The notes below the pieces were generated by a model. That model was not told the origin of the DNA. It made no database searches and was given only the letters and a program-made list of their open reading frames with translations. Positions 14,831 through 28,200 of a stretch of 64,000 nucleotides of DNA are shown one piece after another. The position numbers were made by a program, and so were the translations under genes. The stretch spans positions 118,832,397 through 118,896,396 of the forward strand of contig CM097887.1 of NCBI GenBank assembly GCA_044892525.1, given 5' to 3'. This stretch comes from Schmidtea polychroa. Its lineage: Eukaryota. Positions within the stretch are counted from its first letter, which is position 1; every line of letters starts with the position of its first letter.

Positions 14831-17800
14831 CTATAATATATTGAATCTAGTACGACTTATGAGCAAGGCAGTCCCAAATCCTATCAATGTGAATGGAGTA
14901 CCAATCATAATCACCGAGAGAAATTTCCAACCCCAATTTCGATTGGATGATAAATATTTTTTATTTCGTTCTAGTTTTCCAGAATCAATATTAGTGATGC
15001 TGCTATCATCGTCACTGCCGATCCAAAATCTATGATCAAGAAATTCCTGTTCGTTGGCTAAGCTAATCCATTGTCTACAACGTCTGCGTTGTTCTCCAGG
15101 TACCATGAGACTAGAGAATCCCTCTTTTATTGGACCTTGCAAACCAGAAGGGTCAAGATTTACTCCATAAACCGCAAGAAGTGCTCCTCCTAGTATAACA
15201 GCTTCAGACATAGCTAAGCGTTCGACTCTCAATCCAGTAAGATCAGCCAATGTTTGACAAAATGCTTCACTGCGATCCAAACCTCTTCCACTGACGTTAA
15301 GAACTTTATAAGGCCTTCCAACGACGCTGGACAAAGACGTAAGAAGCTGATTAACTTCAATAGCGACAGATTCCAAAGACGCGCGTACAATATGCCCTGG
15401 GCGAGAGTTAGTAAGATTAAGACCCCATATATTGACGTGCCGATACTGGCTACGTTCAAGGGGACTGTGGGATGCCCCAGTAGTTGGAATAAAATAGCAG
15501 CCATTCGAATCGGTTACAGAATTAGCTACGCTATCAACATCCTCGGTGGTTGATGACAAATGCAAACAATCCCGGAACCAGCTCAATAAATTCTGACTGT
15601 TGTAAAGTGTAGCCTGAATAATAAATAAATATAATTAACAAGTATTTTTTCAAAATTAATGAATTGCAGATTTAAAAATAATCATAAGTAGCTGTGAGAC
15701 TGCGAAGCGAATGTCCTAAAAATCCAAAGTACAAATATAATATGAAACAATAAGTAAGCAAGTGACTCATCAATCAGTGGTACTGGTAAATAATTTATCA
15801 ATTTCTATTAGTATTTCACCGTGGGTTGGTTCACGTATACTTTATCAATACTCGAAGGTATATGAATGTGTGCAAAACTAATATTCCATTCTGAACATCT
15901 TTTCATTTCTGAAAACTGCTTTCGTAAACAAAATTATTTAATATTTGTGATAGTACTTTGAGATTTATTTTTATTCATTGTAGATCCACTAGTAAAACTG
16001 ATTCTTAATACTAAGACTCAATTTACAGGTTCATTTGGCTTCTGGGAAGAGAAACCCTCGCCTAACTGTAACAGCCTGAATGTTGTATTTCAGAAAAAAA
16101 GTAATCGGTCCCCAATCCTTTCTTTCATCTTCCGTTACTTTTATTTCTATTAATCTTTCGTCTTTGATTAAAAATAATTTATACGCTAACAAAAGAATTT
16201 TAATAATATACCAGTAATACTTTGTTAAAAAATTAATCTATACGCTAACAATTTGTCAATAGAAATCTTTCGCCTTTTACGAAATGTAAAAAATTCTTTT
16301 TTTTGATTGTCTAAAAAATTTTCCAACTTCAGTGTTTCCTTTCATTGTTGGCAATGAAGCATTTTAATGAAATCTGTAGCGAAAAACGGAAATAGATTTT
16401 GTAAGCGAATGAAAAATTTGATTATGTAGACAACATGAAATATTTGAATAATAAATGACTCTGTTTGATATTTTATAGAATGTAACACGATAATATGCCA
16501 CTGAGTCTGTAATCAGCTACCATTGACATTTTTTTCATAGAAGGATCCCTATTGGCTTTCTATACAAATCGAACCATAATTGTGTCTCATATAACCTTTG
16601 GGTGATTTTGAATAGGAATATACTATTTATTTACTTTCTTTTTATAAAATTTCAGTCGATATCTTTTAGAATTTGAAACAAAATTTCTGATAGATAAGGT
16701 GAAAATTGACCAATGTCAAAAATAGATTTTAATTAATTATTAATATTAATAAGTAATAATGAAATATTGACCTCAAGGGAGTAAACAACATTGGATTTCT
16801 TGCCGAATTGATAGGAAGCCGTGCTCAGCACATATCCTATCCCCTTTAGCATAGATCTATAGAATAATAGTTCTTCGCCGATTGTGATTGTTACATGACT
16901 GACACCAATTTTGGGATCGATATGCAGACTAACTGATCCGGGCTGTGTGGCTTGACAGCCGATAATGCTTGCCTTAATATCGCACACAGATCCCGTTATT
17001 GGTAATCCATCGATTCCGCTTGGTGAGTCTTGGGCTACTTTTCCAAATAATTCCGAACAGCTTTTGATCTCAGGCAGCATATTAATGTCGATCTCAATGA
17101 ATTTACAGATCGACGAATCCCAACAACCTCGATGCAAATTCATGAGCATTGTATAGCTGGCATTTGTTACGTCTGTTGCGTAACATTCACCTCCTGTCAA
17201 CTGCCAGAGAAGCCATGAATCTAAAGTTCCGAATCTCAGATCACCATTTTTGTATGCTTCTTGAACCGTATTGATGTTTTCAATAAGCCATTTCAATTTA
17301 ACGCCCGCCCACATGGCACTGATAGGTAATCCACACAAATGCTAAATAATAATATCAAATGATTCGTTAATTACTATATTTGTTTTCGATACAGGTATTT
17401 GATTCAAACCCTAACTGCATGTTACTGCGGTACTTATGTATAGGGTACTGATTAATGGACCCCAATCAAAGATTTTATGAGAAGCAATTGAACTAAACCC
17501 GAATTGATACTTTACACCAGTATACTGACAAATGCTGTAACTTGTCTCTCAAATTTTTTAATAAATTTCATTTTACTGACTGAATTTGAGGTCACCAATT
17601 TCAGACCACTAGGAAAGGTTTAAGTGTTATTGTAAAATGTTAGTTCTTTATCATTACTTACTCTCATAAGCCGTGCTTATTACTGCTGGAGAGTGCAATA
17701 TACGTGAATATATGAATGTTGGGAAGCGTTAGATTGCAGATGATATTTGGAGCAAATTAAAGTAAGTACGAGAATACGATAAAAAGGAAATTATTAATAA

Positions 17801-18698
17801 CCTTAAGTGATTTCAAACAAATAAATAAATTTAATACAATTGTACGAGAAGGGATCGAGAAGTACGACTTCTGTATTTTATCCCACTTATACTTAAATTG
17901 TATCCAGAAATAGCGATACAGTTTGATTAGGATTTAATTATCTAAGATAATATTCAGATGAATAAGTAAATCTGGGATTTCAATAGTAAAATATTAAATA
18001 ATTAAAAGTGTTAGATCGATTACATAATATCATAGATGACTTAATATTAAATTGATTATATAATAAATTATCAAATTTTTATGAATCCTTAAGCACCATT
18101 AAAAATCTAATAAATTCATTTTCATTGAATCAATTGTAACCTGAAAATTTGTTCTGGATTTCCTCCAAGATTTATGGATGAGTTTTTGACAGGTGTCATT
18201 GCATCTACAATCATCTTCTGCTAAAGCATTATACAAAGATTTACCAGTTTCTTTATTCCAAACAACGACAACATTTCGATTAGTACATATACTCATACAT
18301 ACAATTTTCTAAACAAAATATTTATAATTTTGATCTTTACAAATGAAAATGAACTTTAAAATCATAATTCAAAGATTTAAAATTATCTACAGCACACTTG
18401 ATGCACTTAAAAGCCTTTTCAATAAGATGTTCTGGTGATAATTCCTTACAACCTTCTCTTTTAATAATCTAAATTTTTCTAATGATAAAGTAAAGACAAA
18501 GAATTGTGAAAATACTAGATTATTAATTTCTTCGTGATAAGTTATTAATTCGCCATTTGAATTAGAAACAACGAAACATTTGGTAAAATAAAGTGATTGG
18601 TGTAGAACAATTGTATAGTAATCATTAATAGCATCACCACGACTACTTTCAGTAATCAAATAAGAATTGTCTTCATTTTTATAGATTTCAAGATTGTC
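14831..18698 (-). CDS. GK: Glycerol kinase-like (FGGY family) protein with C-terminal membrane anchor; probable pseudokinase; start codon not located
   Basis: Phase-0 exons: 18698-18516, 18468-18355, 18308-18141, 17341-16772, 15613-14831. The translation aligns colinearly to animal GK (REGCKELSPEHLIE; VVWNKETGKSLYNA; GLPISA..GVKLKWLIEN; FGTLDSWLLWQLTGG; TDVTNASYTML; GCYFIP; HIVRASLESVA; MSEAVILGGA). It ends in a hydrophobic tail, WKFLSVIMIGTPFTLIGFGTALLISR. Confidence 0.9.
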
Positions 18699-19278
18699 CT
18701 GTAAATAACAGTAAATTATTGACGCAAAATAACATTAAAAATTTTTTTTAATAAAGCACGTTAAAAATCAAATTCAATGAAGAGCATCACAATAATTGAA
18801 GTAATTAAACAACGAAACAATATCTGCAAATAATTAATTTAATTAATTCTTCTCTCAAAAAAATTGACTTGTTAAATTTTCTATTGCAGAATAAATAATA
18901 CTCAGAATTTTTTTAATTTTTTAAATGTTCAACAAGTAAACCANNNNNNNNNNNNNNNNNNNNNNNNNNNNNNNNNNNNNNNNNNNNNNNNNNNNNNNNN
19001 NNNNNNNNNNNNNNNNNNNNNNNNNNNNNNNNNNNNNNNNNNNNNNNNNNNNNNNNNNNNNNNNNNNNNNNNNNNNNNNNNNNNNNNNNNNNNNNNNNNN
19101 NNNNNNNNNNNNNNNNNNNNNNNNNNNNNNNNNNNNNNNATTAAATGCCTTAGTATTGAGTAAAATTTGTTTAGTTATGATACCTTGAATTTTCAGACTT
19201 CGTTTTAACCTTGTCATTGTTTAAATAATACATATTTAAATTTCTAAAACACCCTTTGTTTTTTAAATTATAATTAAA

Positions 19279-22200
19279 ATGGAATCTGGGGGAGATGTTA
19301 TGAGTTTGTTTGATATTACCAATATTCCGAAAACTAAGGAAAACATTGAAGTTAGTTATGCTTATTGAATTTTTTTCAGTTTTCTTGCAATGTTATTAAA
19401 ATTTATGTAACATTCTGTCATTAATTTAGAAAAGATTAAATTTAATTAGAGACTCTTTTCTTACTTTGGATTCTCGTGGAAATGATGAATATTTTAATTT
19501 AAAAACTCATTTTGATTGGTATCCATTTTGCCAAGTATAATAATAGTTCTGAAGCTATTAATATTTATTTTATAGTTTTTAATTAAAACTTCTACTCGCT
19601 TTTTTGAACTGGTTATTAAAAAGAAGTCTGCAACAACAGATTGGTATAAAACTCCAATGAATAAAAAGATTTTGGACGATATTATATATATTTATCATTT
19701 TACATTAAATAATATAGATCGTGGTAAGATGTAATTAATTGTATTGTATTTTCCCATTGTTCAGAAAATATGAATATGGATATAAATGGATTGTTAAATT
19801 ATGTTTTGAATTTAATTTCGCAAATGGCTTCTATCAATTTAGATATCGTTCAACGGTTTGTTAACTTAATATTTACTGAAGTGATTTTCGATGATAAATT
19901 TGCAATAGTAGGTGAAATTAACATTCAATTATGGGAAAGTAATATACATGGCATAATAACGTTTATTTTAACTTGTAACTAATTTAGAAGCTGAAAGTTT
20001 TTTATGTACAATTCTATTAAACATGCATGAATCTGATTCTCAGATATCAGCTCTTCTTCTTAAGAGTGTTTTTTTAATTTATAAGACAATGACTCCGTTT
20101 AAATATCCAGATTTGGGGTTAATCATTAAAACTATCAATCATATATCTAGCTGGTAATATAAAGTTAATAATATTTATTACTTCTATTTTATTATTAAAA
20201 GGAATTTTCGCCAGAATGATAAATTGGCATTGGATATCCATGGATATATATCAGCAATAATAAATCAGTTAATTCTAACAATTGGTCCTGATGCTACTGA
20301 GTGTTTGGTTAACGTTTGTGTGACACTTTCTATCAAGTCTTCAATAAAAATTTGGATGGATAATGGGAAGAGTCATGCTATGATTCAAGATCCCAATGTA
20401 AATACCGGGATAAATAGTCGATTAGAAATCGTAAAACTATGGAATAATGTATATGAATTGATAGGAGAAATCGATGGTGGTTGGACGGAACTGAATGTTT
20501 CACTATGGTTGAAGGAGGTGACGAGTTGTCTGAAAAGGGAGATCGAATATGCTGAATCCCGATCGAAATTCATAAGATATGAACATTGCGTTCCCGATTA
20601 TATATTTTACGAGTTGGCAATGAAACTGATAGTTAGATCTGAAGATGAATACGATAAAGATGTAGCAGACAGTCAGGCACCGAAACATGCCAAATCGATT
20701 ACTCTCATTGATAAAATCGTTGATAATCTGAATTCCGATTTGAGTTGCCGACAGATTTTCTGGATGCGAATGTTAGAAGTTGGATTGGATAACAGTTATT
20801 TCGTTGTTCGATGCCAATCACAAATGGCACAGATCGTCTCCGTTATAAATGCCTGCTTGAATATTGCAAATCTCAGCGCTTCGGTTTACAGTCACCTGCT
20901 GAAAATTGTTCCGAAATTCGCGGACAAAAATCTGAGCCCGGAACATTTCCGTTGCCTATTTGAAAGCATTTTCAAGTGTTTATTAAGGTAATTCAACTGA
21001 TTGACATTTCTCATGAAGGTTTCTTCTAATCAAGCATAATTATTGTGTAAATTTGGATTACAATATTCATAATTCGAAATTGTGTCCAAGCGTCATTATC
21101 GCTGATCTTGGTAACAAGAGAGCGGAGCGGGTATAACACAGTGGCGTAGCTACCATATAGCAAGAGTAAGCAATGCACAGGGGGCCTTTTTCCAAGTTTC
21201 CTTAATTTTCTTCAAAAAACAATGTCAAACAACGGAACGGTCGGCACCAGTCAACAGGGACCTCCAAATGATCGATTTGTGGTTTTATGTAATAAAGCTC
21301 CACTGTTTTGTTTACTTATTGCACAGTACATTATTTGCCTGAATTTTACCTATTCATGCAATCCCCTCTGCCTCTCGTTCGATAATAATGTACTGTATAA
21401 GCAAGCACCTTTAGTTATCTAAATAAATCGCCCATTCATATAGGGGGTGGAAAAAATTGTTTCGCTTGTCGGCTATACACATTTGTCCCTGATACATAAC
21501 TATCATTTTATAACGATTTATACTGTTATATTGTATATTGAGCTCTAATTATTTAATTAAATCGTCTTTCCAAAGAGGACCCAAAAAAATGTTTTCCCTG
21601 TGGCGCATAACTCCTCTGTAACTATAAGCCCTTCTTTTAATTAACACTCCCCTTCCCTTAAAATAAATCTTGGGTAGACCTACGCCACTGGTCTCATACC
21701 GCACAAAATAAACAAGGTGTTCCATCAAAATTTCGAGAATTACGAAGCGTTCCGTCGCAGAAAAATATTGGGAAACCCTGGTCTAATTCAATTGTGCTTC
21801 CAAAGGGTCCAAAAATTTTTCCCCTGTGGCGCTATGATGCTCCGCATCTATTTCACTTGTGTATGCAGTATAGGGGGCCCATCTATGACTCATTGCATAG
21901 GGGCCCCAAATTTCTAGCTACGCCACTGGTATGACATAACGTTGAGTAGAATACGATTAGTTTTCATTATACCAGGCTCTGTGTTAATTACTAGCAAATC
22001 CTTCATTGCACTTCCTAATTTTAATCAATTGTGAATCTGTTTATTGTTTGATTAGAGATGAGAAACCTAATGATTAATATTTGATGGAATTAATGTGAAT
22101 GTTTAGCGATTCCCAGTCACATGTGCCTCTGGTAACTGATACAGTAGCCGTTCTTATATCTATAGTCAAAACGGGATTGTTAACAACTTTACCGGAAGAT

Positions 22201-25200
22201 TTCTGGAGTAAATTAATGTCTCTACTTCCAAGCGAATCATTATTCTCCTTTGTTTCCCACGTGATCTTGCATTTCAACACGAATCAGCCTTATAGAGTAC
22301 TGATAAGTATTGAGACTTGTGTTCAATTATTGAACTGGATCCTTTCGTTTGTCTGTATTTCAACCACATCATTTTCTGATTTATCCCTACTGATAACTGT
22401 CCTAGTAAATCGTAAATCTCACAAAGCCGATTGTTATACAAAGCAATATTTCCCACATCATTATAATCACCCATTGGTCTCTGATATTTCTAACGAAAAT
22501 GCAATTAAATCATGCCTACTTAAGCACCATCCTAATTTTTATCCGCAAGCACCAATCACTGAAATGTTATCAATTAATTCTCTCGACCAATCGGGAATTG
22601 ATATTTTACTGAAATTTTTCAAAATCGTTTCATTAACCGATTCAACGAACTGGTTGATATTTATTATCCATTTCTTCCGTTCCCTTGACGGAATCGATAA
22701 TTCCAACCCGTTCCCTGACCGCATTCACATATATGTCAAGGCTATTTCATACCTGGACAGTATTGCTTCGCGTAATCCAAATTTAGCCCCATTCTTCGTT
22801 GAGGGATTATATTATATTGATTGGAAATATTTGAGTGCAGTCAAAACAAAAACCCCGCAATTATCGCAACCCATCTCAAAAATGACTGCAGCTGTAAAAG
22901 CGTCCCTTATGACAAGTTTATTATCCCATTTTCACCTGAAAGATCTTCAGCAATTTCGTGATAAATGTCGTTGTTATTTCTCGATTTTTTCCGATAATTT
23001 AAGTGAGTTTATTGAAAAATTTTTCAACTCATTTAAACTATACAATATCGATCACATTTCACTGTTGAGTGTGTTCTTAGAAATGATCGAAACCTTTAAA
23101 ATTAGAATCGAACCGGAAACAATATCCAATCTGTTGATGATTGTTAAAGAATCGTTTAAGATGTTCAAAAGAAATTATCGAGTCTATGAGAACTTAATCG
23201 AAATCTGCTTGAATATTATCAAGATTCTTTTTAATTTCGACATAAATAATCACAAAGATTTCATAAATTGCTTTCACGATCTCAGCGGCACGGTTAATAA
23301 GATCTTCGCGAGTAATTTCCCTGAGTGTCATTCCGTGGGAAGGTTATTGGCAAAATTGATGGGGTTATTGTTCGGATATTATTGGAATAATAACAGCATC
23401 GATTTTGACGCATTTCAAGCTCGATTATCGAGTATTTGTGAGTGTGTATTTTCCAATTTTTCTATTGGAAAATCATTTGTTGGGAGGCTTTCCGGGAGTG
23501 TCTTTATGGGTGAGCTGTTCAGGATTTGTCATTCCAATAAATTGCAGCGAATAAATTTGTTGGAATTTTTACTGAAAAATTTCCCCCAAAATTTCATATT
23601 GATTAACAAACAAAACCCCGCCGGATCTGATGAGATATTATACACCAATCAATGCCGCGCGAGAATATCTTCATTTCTTCTTATGTGGATTTGTTCTTTG
23701 AGTTCTGAACGTCGCGATATTTCTAAATTCGGTTCATTAATCTTGCCTTTCATTAACGGTAATATTCCTCACATCCCCATGAAACCTAAATCCATTTTGG
23801 ATTTCCTGTCGATCTTGTACAATAAATCTTTCCCTAACACAATGGATATTTCCGATTTCATTAAGGAGATTATGTTTCCATTCGTAAATGATTGGATTTG
23901 TTTGCAAGCCGATTGTCGACAACAAATCCAATTGCCGGGGAAAGTATTGATTTCGGAAATTGTTTTAAATAATCTCCGAGAATTTCTTTGGATAATTTCT
24001 TCTTGTTCCAATAAAGATAAACGTACGACAATGATAATGAATTATTTCCCATCTCCATTGATATTTGATGAGTCTCAAATGATTCTCAATAATCTACCCA
24101 ATCTCCTTTCTCGAATAATGATATTGGATTGCCTATCATTGGATAAATCATTGTCTAGGTTTGCATCCGATTATATATTTGCAATGTTTTCAATATCTGA
24201 CATTCGTAAAGTTCTCAATGAAAATATTTTCGAAACACTCTGGGAGATCGTTTCATATTTATTGGAAACATCACAAAATTTCGAAAATTTCGATAAAATC
24301 TTGAATATATTTTTCTCGAAATATTTAAATTTATCGATAAGTTTGTCACAGTGGTTGCTATTGCAATCTGGGCGATTGGTTGAGCTTGTGATGTTCATAG
24401 TAGGGAAATATGGCATTGAAATCCATGATAGATACCCAAGCATTTGGTGCATAATTATCAATATCATTATTTCATGTTGTCATGGTAACTTTCGCACAAA
24501 TACAAATAATTCCCACCTCAATGATAAATTTATCAGTTTCCTTATAGTTAGGCATATTAGGGTGCTGGAAATGTATAAAGATGAGAATGATAACGATTTA
24601 CAATTGGTATTGGTATTGAAAAAATTGATTTACTTTTCCAACCGGAACATTGAAACACCCAATCAGGATGTCAATATATTTTGGTATCAAAAAGTCTTTT
24701 ACTTTATTTCCGAATTCTCGGAGAAATATCGTAATTGCAAGTTGATATTCGATGAAATAATATCTGACCTGTTGTCGTCTCCGGTTAAAAACTGCTGTAA
24801 CATCGATGGGTTTATTTTCAACTATTCTCCGTTGATTTCTTTATTCAATCCGAAAATCGATGGAATCCAGTCCATTCGTAATATACTCATTTCTTTTGAT
24901 AAGTTCGGTTTGATAATTCTTGAAAACAAAACCAAATCATTTCGGTGTTTGTCTCAGTTTTTGCAGGATCTATTAAAATCGGAAGTAATCGATCCGTCAA
25001 TTGGGGATTTGTTACAGAAACTGAATGATATGCTTCATTTGTTTTTGGTTTCAAAAATGGAGATATTTCACTCATTAAAATCCAATGAAACATCGGATGC
25101 GATTATATCGTGTTTGATGTATTTGAAATTGCTTCTGTCACAGTTCCACATTTCTCTCAATCAGCAACTATCTGTAATGGGTAAATTTGATCAAGATCCT

Positions 25201-28200
25201 ATAATTTCCGATCAAATTGACCTACTCTACTATCTTGCTATAATGTGTCTTCAGGATTTTGGTAATCGTTCTTGGTCTTCTTATTTATCTTTATGTTCCC
25301 TTAATCAATCAACATGTGTGTCGAAAAATCAATTTTTAAATGATATTCTATCTCTATTTGATCAGCATAAAAACAGTAGCATTATTCACCAAGATATTGA
25401 TTTTTCAACAATATTGCAATTTATTGAAAAATCTATTTTTACTTGTCCTACACAGTGGAGATGTGAATTGACAAAACTGTTAACAGTTCGGAGCTCAAAA
25501 CCCGTGTATAATCTTTGTCATCCCGATCTTATCAGTTTACCATCGATCTCATTTTATTGTCTTCCTCGAATATTTGCCACTGTCGAATTTACAATAGAAG
25601 AAACTGGGATTTTAGCAGAAGTAATCAATAGAGTTCTTCACGGTCCACATTGTGAAAGTCGAAAAATTTCTTTGGTTAATTGCCTTCTGAAAAAAATGGA
25701 GTATATTGAAGATGGAAATTGTCGAACTAACTGGGAAAATATCGATTTTTTCAAGGCCGCTGAAGTGGTTTACTGTGCCAAAATGTATACCGCAACGCTG
25801 CTGTTATTGGATAAATTATGGTTGAAAGAAAGTTACAATGAGATGAATAGTGAGATTATCAGATTGTATTACAAAACTTTCAAATCTCTTGGAAGTCAAG
25901 AGGATTTAACTGCAGATCGATTCTTAATCAATTCTTATCTATCCAACGATGATAGTGATTTATTGTGGTTGCTAAAGAATGGAAAATTTAAAGTTTTACA
26001 TCGCTTATTGATAGTGGAGAAAAATACCGATAGTTTTTCGTTTAAAGGTGAGGAGAAAATTGATATTTTATGGAAATTATCTAGATGGGGAGATGAGGAG
26101 AAATTAGAAATCAATAATCTAAAAACGGAAAACGTTTGCACATTGACCATGTATGATTTCTTATACAGTCGATCGTCACATGTGTCGGAATTCTATCGAA
26201 ATAACGTGGTAGATATCTGTAAAAATTCCTGGGATCAAGAAGCGTGTTTTGAACCATTAATTGAGCGTGCTATTCTATTCGGAAATGAAAAATCTTTGCC
26301 AACTATCCTGGAATCACTGATTCGTATTGCTAATAAATCTAATATCGATCAATTAGACTCAAGCATTGTCTGGGCATTGATCCGGGCTAATAGATTTGCG
26401 AAAAATCTAGAAATAGTCAATGAACAGTTACTGGGAATATCAGATTTGGCAAAGCGGTGCAAGAGACATGAATATATTGATTTTATTCGAGACATGTTAA
26501 ATTTACATGAAGTTGATAAAAGTCTTTTGAAGTGCAGTGGAGAATCTTCTTTAATTCGAACTATTGATATCTTCAGTCAGCGAAATGAAATGGAGGAGAT
26601 GAAGAAATCATTTTTACAACTTGAGCAGTTTATATACGATTCACAAGTAATATTATTGTTTCTGGTAATTCTAAAATATTGCTTCATACCGTCTTGGGCT
26701 AGTACATTTGATGTAGCATTTGTTTCTTCCCGAGTAACAAATCCAATCACGGGATTTCGGGATGCTGATTTATAGATATTGTTTTTCATTGAATAAATGT
26801 ATTTTTGGTTTTTAAAAAAAACCTTAATGCATTTAGTATTTCTCATTTAGATCCGATCTCAGTTTATTTCAAAAGTTTCCGGCTGGCGAAAAACTCTTTT
26901 GGACTCCATTGAAGTTGGAGGAATCGTTGATAACTTATCATAAATATTTTCGAGATAAAATCCTATTTTACCACTGTAAATTAAAATTGCATTTTTTATT
27001 AGGCTATGAAATCTTGAAAAATTCTGGTTTTCTAATTATTAATTGTTAATAGCTAGCTGCAGGTGTCCTTCAATGCTGTGATTGTGATTGAATTGTGATT
27101 GAATGTAATAATCTCGATGAAGTGCAATTTACATAAGATTTAACACATTTTTGTACTCTGTAACTTTAAGTCGAATAATGTTCATTTTGCACGGAACTCC
27201 ATCATTAAATTGACGAAAATTACCTTCATAAAGTTGCATGCATTTAATAAGATCCTCTTCAGTACCACAAGCGAAAGACAAGAGTGCGTTGGGTAAATTA
27301 TGATTTGAAGTATGACCAAAGAATATTGCACCATTAGTTCACTTTAATGTTAGACTCATCTAAGGATAAAAGAATATCTTTCATGCTTTATCATTTTATT
27401 AATTCCTTCGACAGCTTTTTCGAAATAAGTGACTTAAATTTCCACAGAGCCATAATATTTGAATATAACCTATGATTTAAATCATACCCATTTAAAGTTT
27501 TCATGATCAAATTAAATTCAAAAGAATAACAAGTCAGGAACTCATAAAAATAATCCAATTTAATTACAAAAAACAAGTGAAGCAAAAGAAGCGCGCATAG
27601 AATTGACCAGTTTCTATTTGAATAAAGTTTTAAATATAACTTTTGAGAAAGATATTGTTTTTACCAATTTAATACTTTATGACCTGTATATCGCTATTCT
27701 CAGTAACCTTATCCTTTTAATAAGCCTTTCTCATATTTAGCATTATATTTGACCCCGTTGAGCTTAATAGTCTAACATGGGACACCCATGAATTGATAAT
27801 CTCTGCCATCAATTTCGCTCTATGGATAAAGGATCATGAGTTATATATACAACGTAATAATGACGTTAGAGGTTGAGGTAATTTTTTTAAGTCACTCAGG
27901 TCAAGGAATCGAACTAATATACTTTTTTAATCACAACCTCTGACTAATTTAAAAGATCCCGATCCCGTTCTTAGTAAAACTATATATAGGCAGATTTCCA
28001 TTCACTATAATAGAATGTAATAATCTCGATGAAGTGGAATTTATCTAACCTAAATCATTTAACTTGATCAGAAATTTTAAATGTTGCTTTTTGCGTGCTA
28101 CACACATGTTATCTTGTAAAATTTGCACTTTACCTAATCAAAATTAAATGATTAAAGCTCAATTTAATTGAAAAATCGATTTACAAGGTTTGATGTGCTG

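What the first reader, a model, noticed from the sequence alone, without database searches (positions are those of the whole stretch)
14831..18698. Glycerol kinase homologue with an intact gene but destroyed active site: candidate membrane-anchored pseudokinase
Seen in sequence: the ORF is uninterrupted over five exons and keeps the GK scaffold, yet nearly every ligand-binding motif is replaced. Phosphate-1 DQGTSSTR becomes HQSLYFTK; NQRET becomes NRNVV; VWLD.R becomes AEDDCR; TYFS becomes AMWA; GDQ becomes CDI (only the Asp is kept); TYGTG becomes HIDPK; the adenosine-binding DGG becomes SGR. The C-terminal hydrophobic anchor is retained. Established: these motifs bind Mg-ATP and glycerol in FGGY kinases (E. 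coli GlpK D10/T13/R17, R83/E84, Y135, D245/Q246), and mouse testis Gykl1/Gk2 are GK paralogues reported to act structurally in sperm mitochondrial sheath formation. Inference: this is a conserved non-enzymatic (scaffold or sensor) GK, possibly an independently evolved pseudokinase.
Basis: partly seen in the sequence, partly recalled or inferred. Interest (0 to 1): 0.7.

Follow-up and report, generated by a model that had tools for sequence, protein, structure and literature searches.

The report
Planarian glycerol-kinase-derived pseudoenzyme, tail-anchored
This is a real, expressed flatworm gene that copies the glycerol kinase fold but has lost almost every ATP- and glycerol-binding residue, yet evolves nearly as slowly as the true enzyme, so it most likely works by binding rather than catalysis, in independent parallel to the mammalian sperm proteins GK2 and Gykl1.

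Summary
A five-exon, minus-strand ORF (14831-18698, 605 codons) is a true FGGY/glycerol-kinase (GK) homologue. Spliced RNA contigs from three runs in two studies match all four exon junctions exactly.

The missing start codon is explained. The mRNA carries a flatworm spliced leader whose terminal AUG is in frame with the first exon base. No upstream exon can therefore supply a canonical DQGT motif.

At 16 E. coli GlpK ligand positions only the catalytic Asp is kept in all three orthologues; Arg84 survives in two. The glycerol-kinase equivalog model scores 314 bits against a 590-bit cut-off, while the predicted fold still matches GK structures (TM 0.90).

It is not decaying. An orthologue in a second species has identical exon lengths for exons 1-4 and 73% amino-acid identity. 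dN is 0.19 with synonymous sites saturated; the canonical GK of the same two species gives 78% and dN 0.15. The altered motifs are conserved in their new state. The tree shows a very long stem and short tips.

A canonical GK paralogue lies on the same chromosome. A C-terminal tail anchor is present.

Function as a membrane-anchored adaptor is inferred, not shown. I found no earlier report of it. The scan's index held only this same finding.

The parts
18699..18700 (-). AG acceptor used for spliced-leader trans-splicing. The SL's 3' AUG becomes the start codon, in frame with the first exon base (18698).
   Evidence: The X1 RNA contig runs from the stop codon to 18699 and then carries 24 more bases. 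With the G at 18699 these equal the 3' end of an SL RNA gene that occurs 11 times exactly in this genome and is followed by GT.
18516..18698 (-). Coding exon 1 (61 codons). It holds the N-terminal tail and the degenerate phosphate-1 loop HQSLYFTK (18579-18602).
18355..18468 (-). Coding exon 2 (38 codons). EGWVEQDP has become EGCKELSP.
18141..18308 (-). Coding exon 3 (56 codons). NQRET has become TNRNVV (18267-18284). VWxDxR has become ALAEDDCR (18204-18227).
16772..17341 (-). Coding exon 4 (190 codons), the best-conserved core. TYFS has become SAMWAG (17303-17320). GDQQA has become VCDIKA with the catalytic Asp kept (16970-16987). It also holds an insertion of about 11 residues and TITIG in place of TYGTG (16874-16930).
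14831..15613 (-). Coding exon 5 (260 codons plus stop). GSVAIAGA has become ATLYNSQN (15590-15613). DGG has become VSGRGL (15278-15295). A C-terminal extension of about 110 residues follows.
14858..14923 (-). Predicted tail-anchor transmembrane helix of 22 residues (FLSVIMIGTPFTLIGFGTALLI). Basic residues lie before it. It is followed by an 8-residue basic tail, SRTRFNIL (14834-14857).
   Evidence: It is the most hydrophobic 19-residue window of the protein (Kyte-Doolittle 2.0). It is helical in the AF2 model (H573-605, pLDDT about 84). It is conserved in the orthologue from the second species, on locus L007.
20703..20864 (-). Not part of the gene in this genome. This stretch matches the extra 53-residue N-terminus of database protein P0001.
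   Evidence: Here it has no ATG at the P0001 start, has an in-frame stop, and lies antisense to an exon of a plus-strand gene. The extension is probably a gene-model or assembly artefact, made because the true AUG comes from the SL.

Best explanation
This is a lineage-restricted paralogue of glycerol kinase, seen so far in three close orthologues from probably triclad planarian species. It kept the two-domain FGGY/ASKHA fold and the C-terminal tail anchor of animal GKs but lost the Mg-ATP and glycerol sites.

Shown:
- It is transcribed, spliced at four GT-AG introns and trans-spliced to a spliced leader whose terminal AUG opens the 606-codon frame.
- It has evolved under purifying selection since at least the split of two species, at about 1.3 times the nonsynonymous rate of the genuine GK.
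- Its former active-site loops are as conserved as the rest of the protein in their new sequence.

Inferred:
- It cannot phosphorylate glycerol.
- It sits in an organelle membrane, most likely the mitochondrial outer membrane, with the GK-like body in the cytosol.
- It acts by binding. It may serve as an adaptor or scaffold, or as a receptor for a new ligand in the remodelled cleft. This is the way mammalian GK2/Gykl1 act on sperm mitochondria.
- It arose by DNA-level duplication of the intron-containing GK gene, followed by a burst of change and then stasis.
For: Homology and fold.
- Pfam FGGY_N and FGGY_C match.
- The best NCBIfam model is glycerol kinase: 314 bits against 113 for xylulokinase.
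- The AF2 model has pLDDT 78.9 and pTM 0.77. Its top 50 PDB matches are all GK or GK-like structures, with target TM about 0.90 and rmsd 2.4 A.

Active-site loss. E. coli numbering includes Met1.
- D11H, G13S, T14L/I, T15Y/N, S16F, R18K, E85N, W104E, Y136M/R, Q247I, G311Q.
- TYGTG is lost and DGG has become SG(R)G.
- D246 is kept in all three orthologues. R84 is kept in two of three.
- All 12 canonical comparators, including this genome's own GK, keep these residues. The honeybee protein is an exception at some.

Expression and start codon. The spliced 1849-nt contig consists of 24 nt of SL, a G, the 1818-nt CDS and 6 nt. The SL gene is GCCGTTAGACGGTCTTATCGAAATCTATATAAATCTTATATG followed by GT, with an Sm-like site downstream. 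Flatworm SLs end in ATG, which can start translation (PMC12582326).

Constraint.
- The orthologue on locus L007 has exon lengths 183/114/168/570 identical to the window and an intact frame.
- Amino-acid identity is 73% and dN is 0.19, with dS saturated. ML omega is about 0.03, which is unreliable but clearly well below 1.
- The canonical GK of the same two species (L005 against L014, same sample) gives 78% identity and dN 0.15.
- Of seven exon differences between the RNA contigs and the genome, six are synonymous and one is E to D.
- Motif windows are 76% identical between the two orthologues, against 73% elsewhere.
- The tree has a stem of 4.3-5.8 substitutions per site and within-clade branches of 0.03-0.23.

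Paralogy. The gene is single copy. A canonical GK lies at C3:33.32-33.34 Mb with DSGTTSSR, NQRET, TYFS, GDQQ, TYGTG and DGG.

Tail anchor.
Against: - No biochemical, localisation or phenotype data exist.
- The catalytic Asp is retained, and Arg84 is retained in the Schmidtea-like sequences, so residual or altered ligand binding is not excluded.
- The AF2 model is weak in part of domain II (residues 290-410, pLDDT 43-89) and around the insertion.
- The runs taken as RNA are only guessed to be RNA by the index. Their RNA nature is inferred from the missing introns and the SL.
- Tissue of expression is unknown, so the sperm/mitochondria analogy is only an analogy.
- Only three orthologous sequences are known, so omega cannot be estimated properly and the age of the duplication is open.
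Confidence: 0.7

Rival explanations
1. It is still an enzyme: a kinase or phosphotransferase with a non-canonical nucleotide site, or a GK-fold protein with a new substrate. It would use the retained Asp (CDIKA) as catalytic base.
For: - D246 is invariant in the three orthologues and R84 is kept in two.
- The remodelled cleft loops are conserved.
- The fold is intact.
Against: - Both phosphate-binding loops and the adenosine motif that define ASKHA phosphotransferases are replaced. Hydrophobic and bulky residues fill the former phosphate-1 loop (HQSLYFTK), and GSVAIAGA has become ATLYNSQN.
- The score against the GK equivalog model is about half the cut-off.
Confidence: 0.1
2. It is a transcribed but decaying duplicate (an unprocessed pseudogene) whose open frame is a leftover.
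For: - Divergence from all GKs is extreme (at most 38% identity).
- Distribution is narrow.
- There is no genomic ATG at the start of the frame.
Against: - The frame is intact in two species whose synonymous sites are saturated. Exon lengths are identical for exons 1-4 and dN is close to that of the real enzyme.
- Polymorphism is 6 synonymous to 1 conservative.
- Within-clade branches are short after a long stem.
- The start codon is supplied by the SL.
Confidence: 0.03
3. It is non-catalytic but not mitochondrial. It would be a tail-anchored protein of the ER or peroxisome, or a soluble regulator that heterodimerises with the canonical GK and modulates it.
For: - GKs form dimers and tetramers, and the most conserved block shared with canonical GK is the structural core of exon 4 (model residues 121-240: 14-19 of every 30 identical).
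- Tail anchors can target several organelles.
Against: Nothing speaks directly against it. The moderately hydrophobic transmembrane helix with basic flanks, and the precedent of animal GK tails, favour the mitochondrial outer membrane. That preference rests on general knowledge and was not tested.
Confidence: 0.15

Closest known systems
Mouse Gykl1 and Gk2 / human GK2 (testis GK-like proteins; PMC5566117, PMC6473107). Related: the GK-like arrays on VDAC in mammalian sperm mitochondria (PDB 7nie; bioRxiv 10.1101/2021.02.16.431372).
   Same: - They are GK paralogues with no detectable GK activity.
- A C-terminal sequence targets them to the mitochondrial outer membrane.
- They act as adaptors (Pld6 interaction, mitochondrial sheath).
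- The fold match to 7nie has target TM 0.83.
   Different: - The mammalian genes are intronless retroposons of Gyk, highly similar to it in sequence. This gene keeps introns, two of them at the same positions as in the canonical paralogue.
- It is only 29-36% identical to any GK and has replaced nearly all ligand-binding residues.
- Tissue, partners and location are unknown here.
- It is phylogenetically independent (flatworm against mammal).
Canonical animal glycerol kinase (EC 2.7.1.30; TIGR01311). This includes the paralogue of this genome at G000:C3:33.32-33.34 Mb.
   Same: - FGGY_N plus FGGY_C architecture.
- Shared intron positions before LCGLP and after YxLE.
- A C-terminal hydrophobic tail like that of many invertebrate GKs (for example P0152, P0160, P0172).
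   Different: - It fails the equivalog cut-off (314 against 590 bits; a canonical mollusc GK scores 744).
- It lacks the phosphate-1, phosphate-2, adenosine and glycerol-binding residues.
- It has an insertion of about 11 residues and a longer C-terminal linker.
Flatworm mRNAs that take their initiator AUG from the spliced leader (Cheng et al. 2006, as cited in PMC12582326).
   Same: - The SL ends in AUG.
- The AUG is the first one in the mRNA and is in frame with the exon that begins at the acceptor.
- The frame is open from the first exon base in both species.
   Different: Nothing differs in kind. This is an ordinary example, but it explains why gene predictors mis-annotate the 5' end, as in the P0001 extension.

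Membership tests
FGGY carbohydrate kinase superfamily (fold level) | Both Pfam domains, FGGY_N (PF00370) and FGGY_C (PF02782), score above their gathering thresholds. | tested here: met
   134.6 and 77.4 bits against cut-offs of 28.8 and 27. The window's own exons also match.
FGGY carbohydrate kinase superfamily (fold level) | Two-domain ASKHA fold superposable on solved glycerol kinases. | tested here: met
   The AF2 model (pLDDT 78.9) against 8y1t, 5gn5, 8pry and 2d4w gives target TM 0.90-0.91 and rmsd 2.4-2.6 A.
Glycerol kinase proper (EC 2.7.1.30, NCBIfam TIGR01311 equivalog) | Score at or above the curated equivalog cut-off. | tested here: not met
   314.1 bits against a cut-off of 590.35. 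The control canonical GK P0152 scores 744.4.
Glycerol kinase proper (EC 2.7.1.30, NCBIfam TIGR01311 equivalog) | Mg-ATP residues (D11, T14, R18, T268 in TYGTG, G311, G412/DGG) and glycerol residues (R84, E85, W104, Y136, D246, Q247). Their roles are recalled from UniProt P0A6F3 and the E. coli GlpK structures. | tested here: not met
   Only D246 is kept in all three orthologues; R84 is kept in two of three. The rest are replaced.
Glycerol kinase proper (EC 2.7.1.30, NCBIfam TIGR01311 equivalog) | Glycerol kinase activity. | not testable with these tools
   Needs an enzyme assay.
GK2/Gykl1-type non-catalytic GK-like adaptors | A GK paralogue that coexists with a canonical GK. | tested here: met
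   The canonical GK is on C3 at 33.3 Mb. Both paralogues are also present in the second species.
GK2/Gykl1-type non-catalytic GK-like adaptors | Origin as an intronless retroposon of Gyk (PMC5566117). | tested here: not met
   The gene has four introns confirmed by RNA, two of them at positions shared with the canonical paralogue. It is therefore an analogue, not a member.
GK2/Gykl1-type non-catalytic GK-like adaptors | [quoted passage not shown] | tested here: inconclusive
   A 22-residue hydrophobic helix lies 8 residues from the C-terminus with basic flanks. The organelle cannot be determined here.
GK2/Gykl1-type non-catalytic GK-like adaptors | Testis or sperm expression and a role in sperm mitochondria. 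| not tested
   The RNA runs are coded and their tissue is unknown. No paper on a planarian GK-like gene was found.
Pseudogene | Disrupted frame or neutral evolution. | tested here: not met
SL trans-spliced mRNA with an SL-donated initiator AUG | SL sequence at the RNA 5' end joined at an AG acceptor. SL RNA gene in the genome with a GT donor. AUG in frame. | tested here: met
   No Rfam model exists for this SL.

The most novel reading that the evidence does not exclude
After duplication, the GK cleft was rebuilt into a new binding site. The rebuilt site is conserved and rich in cysteines: 13 Cys are invariant in the three orthologues and only 2 are shared with canonical GK. It would bind a ligand or partner unrelated to glycerol or ATP. 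This would make the protein a planarian-specific receptor or adaptor on the mitochondrial surface. It would have evolved in convergence with mammalian GK2/Gykl1. It would also depend on trans-splicing for its start codon.
Probability: 0.2. Interest if true: 0.6.

Novelty: new variant of a known kind. Interest (0 to 1): 0.5.

Why it matters
It would be a second, independent case in which animals recycled glycerol kinase, a membrane-tethered metabolic enzyme, into a non-catalytic protein. The loss of the active site here is far more radical than in mammalian GK2/Gykl1, and the signature of 'burst then stasis' is clear.

Planarians are open to RNAi, in situ hybridisation and single-cell atlases. 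The function of a GK-fold pseudoenzyme could therefore be tested directly, including whether the link to sperm or mitochondrial organisation is convergent.

Practically, it shows that 'glycerol kinase' annotations by homology can be wrong about activity. It also shows that flatworm gene models without an ATG may be complete once the spliced-leader AUG is counted.

Tried and rejected
1. P0001's 53-residue N-terminal extension as the true start. It maps to 20864-20703, where this genome has no ATG at the P0001 start and has an in-frame stop. It lies antisense to an exon of the plus-strand neighbour, and the RNA contig instead carries the SL. I rejected it as the start here. A GT donor does follow ATGAGA at 20703, so a rare cis-spliced form giving MRD... 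is not excluded.

2. Classical dN/dS. The NG86, LWL85 and YN00 methods fail because synonymous sites are saturated. The ML dS of 5.8 is unreliable. I used dN relative to the canonical paralogue instead.

3. Placing the duplication on the tree. The position of the divergent clade is unresolved. A clade with the planarian canonical GKs is not rejected (delta lnL 1.18, p-AU 0.40) but is not shown either.

4. More orthologues. Searches of 1.84 billion representatives and of 5.8 billion clusters gave only P0001 (96%) and P0002 (69%). No DNA is on record for P0001.

5. Last exon(s) of the canonical GK. They were not found within 10.5 kb downstream, so I could not check whether it also has a tail anchor.

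6. Rfam has no family matching the SL RNA loci.

7. Literature. No paper on a planarian GK-like gene or on FGGY pseudoenzymes was found in the held library. The paper on planarian SL3 (PMC3994195) is not held.

8. Pfam on the neighbouring 1558-aa ORF gave no hit.

9. No complex prediction was run, because no specific partner is claimed.
Full report
**Anatomy.** The window is AT-rich (22-36% GC). It lies at G000:C3:118832397-118896396 of a 781-Mb assembly. On the minus strand four ORF pieces carry FGGY_N or FGGY_C similarity.

Joining them at GT..AG sites gives five phase-0 exons:
- 18698-18516
- 18468-18355
- 18308-18141
- 17341-16772
- 15613-14831

Together they make 605 codons plus a stop. 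PDB sequence hits are all glycerol kinases (E down to 4e-33 for exon 4 alone).

**Transcription and the start codon.** Runs X1-X3 come from two studies. The index only guesses that they are RNA. They hold 27-35% of the sampled words of the stretch, about what the exons contribute.

Laid on 14900-20899, their contigs skip precisely the four predicted introns (CT..AC on the plus strand). The DNA run X6 has one contig colinear with the genome.

The X1 contig is 1849 nt long. It ends at 18699 with 24 further bases. With the G at 18699, their reverse complement reads TCGAAATCTATATAAATCTTATATG.

That 25-mer followed by GT occurs 11 times exactly in this genome and never in the reversed control. In the best copies it is the end of GCCGTTAGACGGTCTTATCGAAATCTATATAAATCTTATATG|GT. 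An Sm-like AATTTTTGA and a hairpin follow. This is a spliced-leader RNA gene.

All reported flatworm SLs end in ATG, which can serve as initiator (PMC12582326, citing Cheng et al. 2006). Here that AUG is the only AUG of the leader and is in frame with the first exon base. The protein therefore begins MDNLEIYKNEDNSY.

- Why no ATG is present in exons 1-2.
- Whether another first exon could bring a canonical DQGT. It does not.

The SL and the AT-rich, roughly 780-Mb genome point to a triclad planarian, Schmidtea-like. That identification rests on my own recollection of the planarian SL1 sequence and was not verified in a paper.

**Active site.** I aligned four groups:
- the window protein
- its two orthologues
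- this genome's canonical GK
- E. coli GlpK (taken from NC_000913) plus 11 other canonical GKs

The roles of the residues are recalled from UniProt P0A6F3 and the GlpK structures. Numbering includes Met1.

| Canonical residue or motif | Window protein and orthologues |
|---|---|
| D11 | H |
| G13 | S |
| T14 | L/I |
| T15 | Y/N |
| S16 | F |
| R18 | K |
| R84 | R, R, S |
| E85 | N |
| W104 | E |
| Y136 | M, R, R |
| D246 | D (kept in all three) |
| Q247 | I |
| TYGTG | TITIG behind an insertion of about 11 residues |
| G311 | Q |
| GSVAIAGA | ATLYNSQN |
| DGG | SG(R)G |

The canonical paralogue of the same genome keeps DSGTTSSR, NQRET, VWSDTR, TYFS, GDQQ, TYGTG and DGG.

The GK equivalog model TIGR01311 scores 314 bits against a cut-off of 590. 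A mollusc GK scores 744. GK nevertheless remains by far the best FGGY subfamily.

The fold is retained. The AF2 model has pLDDT 78.9 and pTM 0.77. Its best PDB matches are GK structures at target TM about 0.90.

**Is it alive or decaying?** An exhaustive search with exon 5 found only two close relatives among 1.84 billion representatives:
- P0001: 96% identical, 659 aa.
- P0002: 69% identical.

Everything else is 38% identical or less.

P0002 lies on a 2.7-kb genomic contig (locus L007). That contig carries all five exons with short introns (54, 45, 52 and 202 nt). Exon lengths for exons 1-4 are identical to the window (183, 114, 168, 570) and the frame of 612 codons is intact.

Window against L007 gives 73% amino-acid identity and dN 0.19. 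Synonymous sites are saturated.

The same sample also holds the canonical GK (locus L014). For two homologous exons the results are:

| Gene | aa identity | dN |
|---|---|---|
| Canonical GK | 78% | 0.15 |
| Matching segment of the divergent gene | 71% | 0.21 |

The divergent copy therefore evolves only about 1.3-1.4 times faster than the real enzyme. The duplication predates the split of the two species.

Further signs of constraint:
- Seven differences between the RNA contigs and the genome in exons 4-5 are six synonymous and one E to D.
- Windows around the former ligand-binding residues are 76% identical between the two orthologues, against 73% elsewhere. They are only 30% identical to the canonical consensus. 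The new sequence of the cleft is itself under constraint.
- In ML trees the clade hangs on a stem of 4.3-5.8 substitutions per site, with tips of 0.03-0.23. The window-to-L007 path is 0.40 and the canonical planarian pair is 0.46.

This is a burst followed by stasis.

**Origin.** The gene is single copy. It shares intron positions with the canonical paralogue at two places: before (H)LCGLP and after Y(S/A)(L/F)E. It therefore arose by DNA duplication, not retroposition.

Its place in the GK tree is unresolved. A clade with the planarian canonical GKs is not rejected (p-AU 0.40).

**C-terminus.** After the FGGY_C domain comes a linker of about 80 residues with low model confidence. Then comes a 22-residue hydrophobic helix (14858-14923), preceded by RNKKYLSSNRNWGWK and followed by SRTRFNIL.

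This is the layout of a tail-anchored protein. It is conserved in L007. It resembles the tails of invertebrate GKs seen.

Mitochondrial outer-membrane targeting is an inference from general knowledge of tail anchors and of animal GKs.

**Comparison with what is known.** Mouse Gykl1 and Gk2 share several features with this gene (PMC5566117; PMC6473107):
- They lack detectable GK activity.
- Their C-terminal sequences target them to the mitochondrial outer membrane.
- They bind Pld6.
- They are needed for the sperm mitochondrial sheath.

GK-like proteins also form arrays on VDAC in mammalian sperm (PDB 7nie; bioRxiv 10.1101/2021.02.16.431372). The present gene works, by inference, like these.

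It is not a member of that group, however. The mammalian genes are intronless retroposons very similar to Gyk. This gene is intron-bearing, flatworm-specific and far more degenerate.

I found no paper on a planarian GK-like gene or on FGGY pseudoenzymes. The scan's own index holds only this same finding.

**Verdict.** The gene is best called an independently evolved, tail-anchored GK-fold pseudoenzyme, a new variant of a known kind.

Loss of activity, location and role still need experiments. The N run at 18947-19140 lies in the intergenic space and was not touched.

Noticed in passing
window 19140-26775 (+): A large plus-strand gene lies head-to-head with the GK-like gene. An RNA contig of 3418 nt shows five very short GT..AG introns (41-79 nt) between 19350 and 20201. 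One exon has a 1558-aa open frame (22099-26775) with no Pfam match.
   Followed up: partly
window 20703-20864 (-): Database protein P0001 (UniParc UPI00060CAA20) has a 53-residue N-terminal extension encoded here, antisense to an exon of the neighbouring gene. In this genome the stretch has an in-frame stop and no ATG at the P0001 start. It is probably an annotation or assembly artefact, made because the real AUG comes from the spliced leader.
   Followed up: yes
window 14831-18698 and L007:47-2238: Third-position GC rises steeply from 5' to 3' along the gene in both species. In the window, exons 1-3 have GC3 0.16-0.23 and exons 4-5 have 0.42 and 0.33. In L007 it rises from 0.41 to 0.84. The second species is much GC-richer in this gene (GC3 0.72 against 0.32). 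The cause is unknown.
   Followed up: no
proteins P0262, P0252, P0232, P0255 (Apis, Athalia, Ceratosolen, Microplitis 'glycerol kinase'): These hymenopteran proteins annotated as glycerol kinase all read GNQQ (catalytic Asp to Asn), TYRSG (for TYGTG) and DGK (for DGG). They may be another conserved, possibly inactive, GK lineage.
   Followed up: partly
G000:C2:109761206-109762310, C2:113231947-113252138 and other places (L008-L011): Spliced-leader RNA gene copies. Several form inverted pairs 1.1-1.8 kb apart. Some dispersed copies have a changed donor or a different downstream sequence and may be dead copies. Rfam has no model for them.
   Followed up: partly
window 16434-16750 and 18079-18943: Many contigs of the DNA run X6 break or change partner inside intron 4 (about 16640-16750) and upstream of exon 1. 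A 7-bp insertion (AGTTACT) relative to the window sits at 18897. Repeats or indel polymorphism lie in these non-coding parts.
   Followed up: no
G000:C1:194355401-194356060 and C1:134466456-134466587: Two further FGGY_C matches in the genome. They are presumably other FGGY kinases (xylulokinase, GK5 or FGGY type) and were not examined.
   Followed up: no
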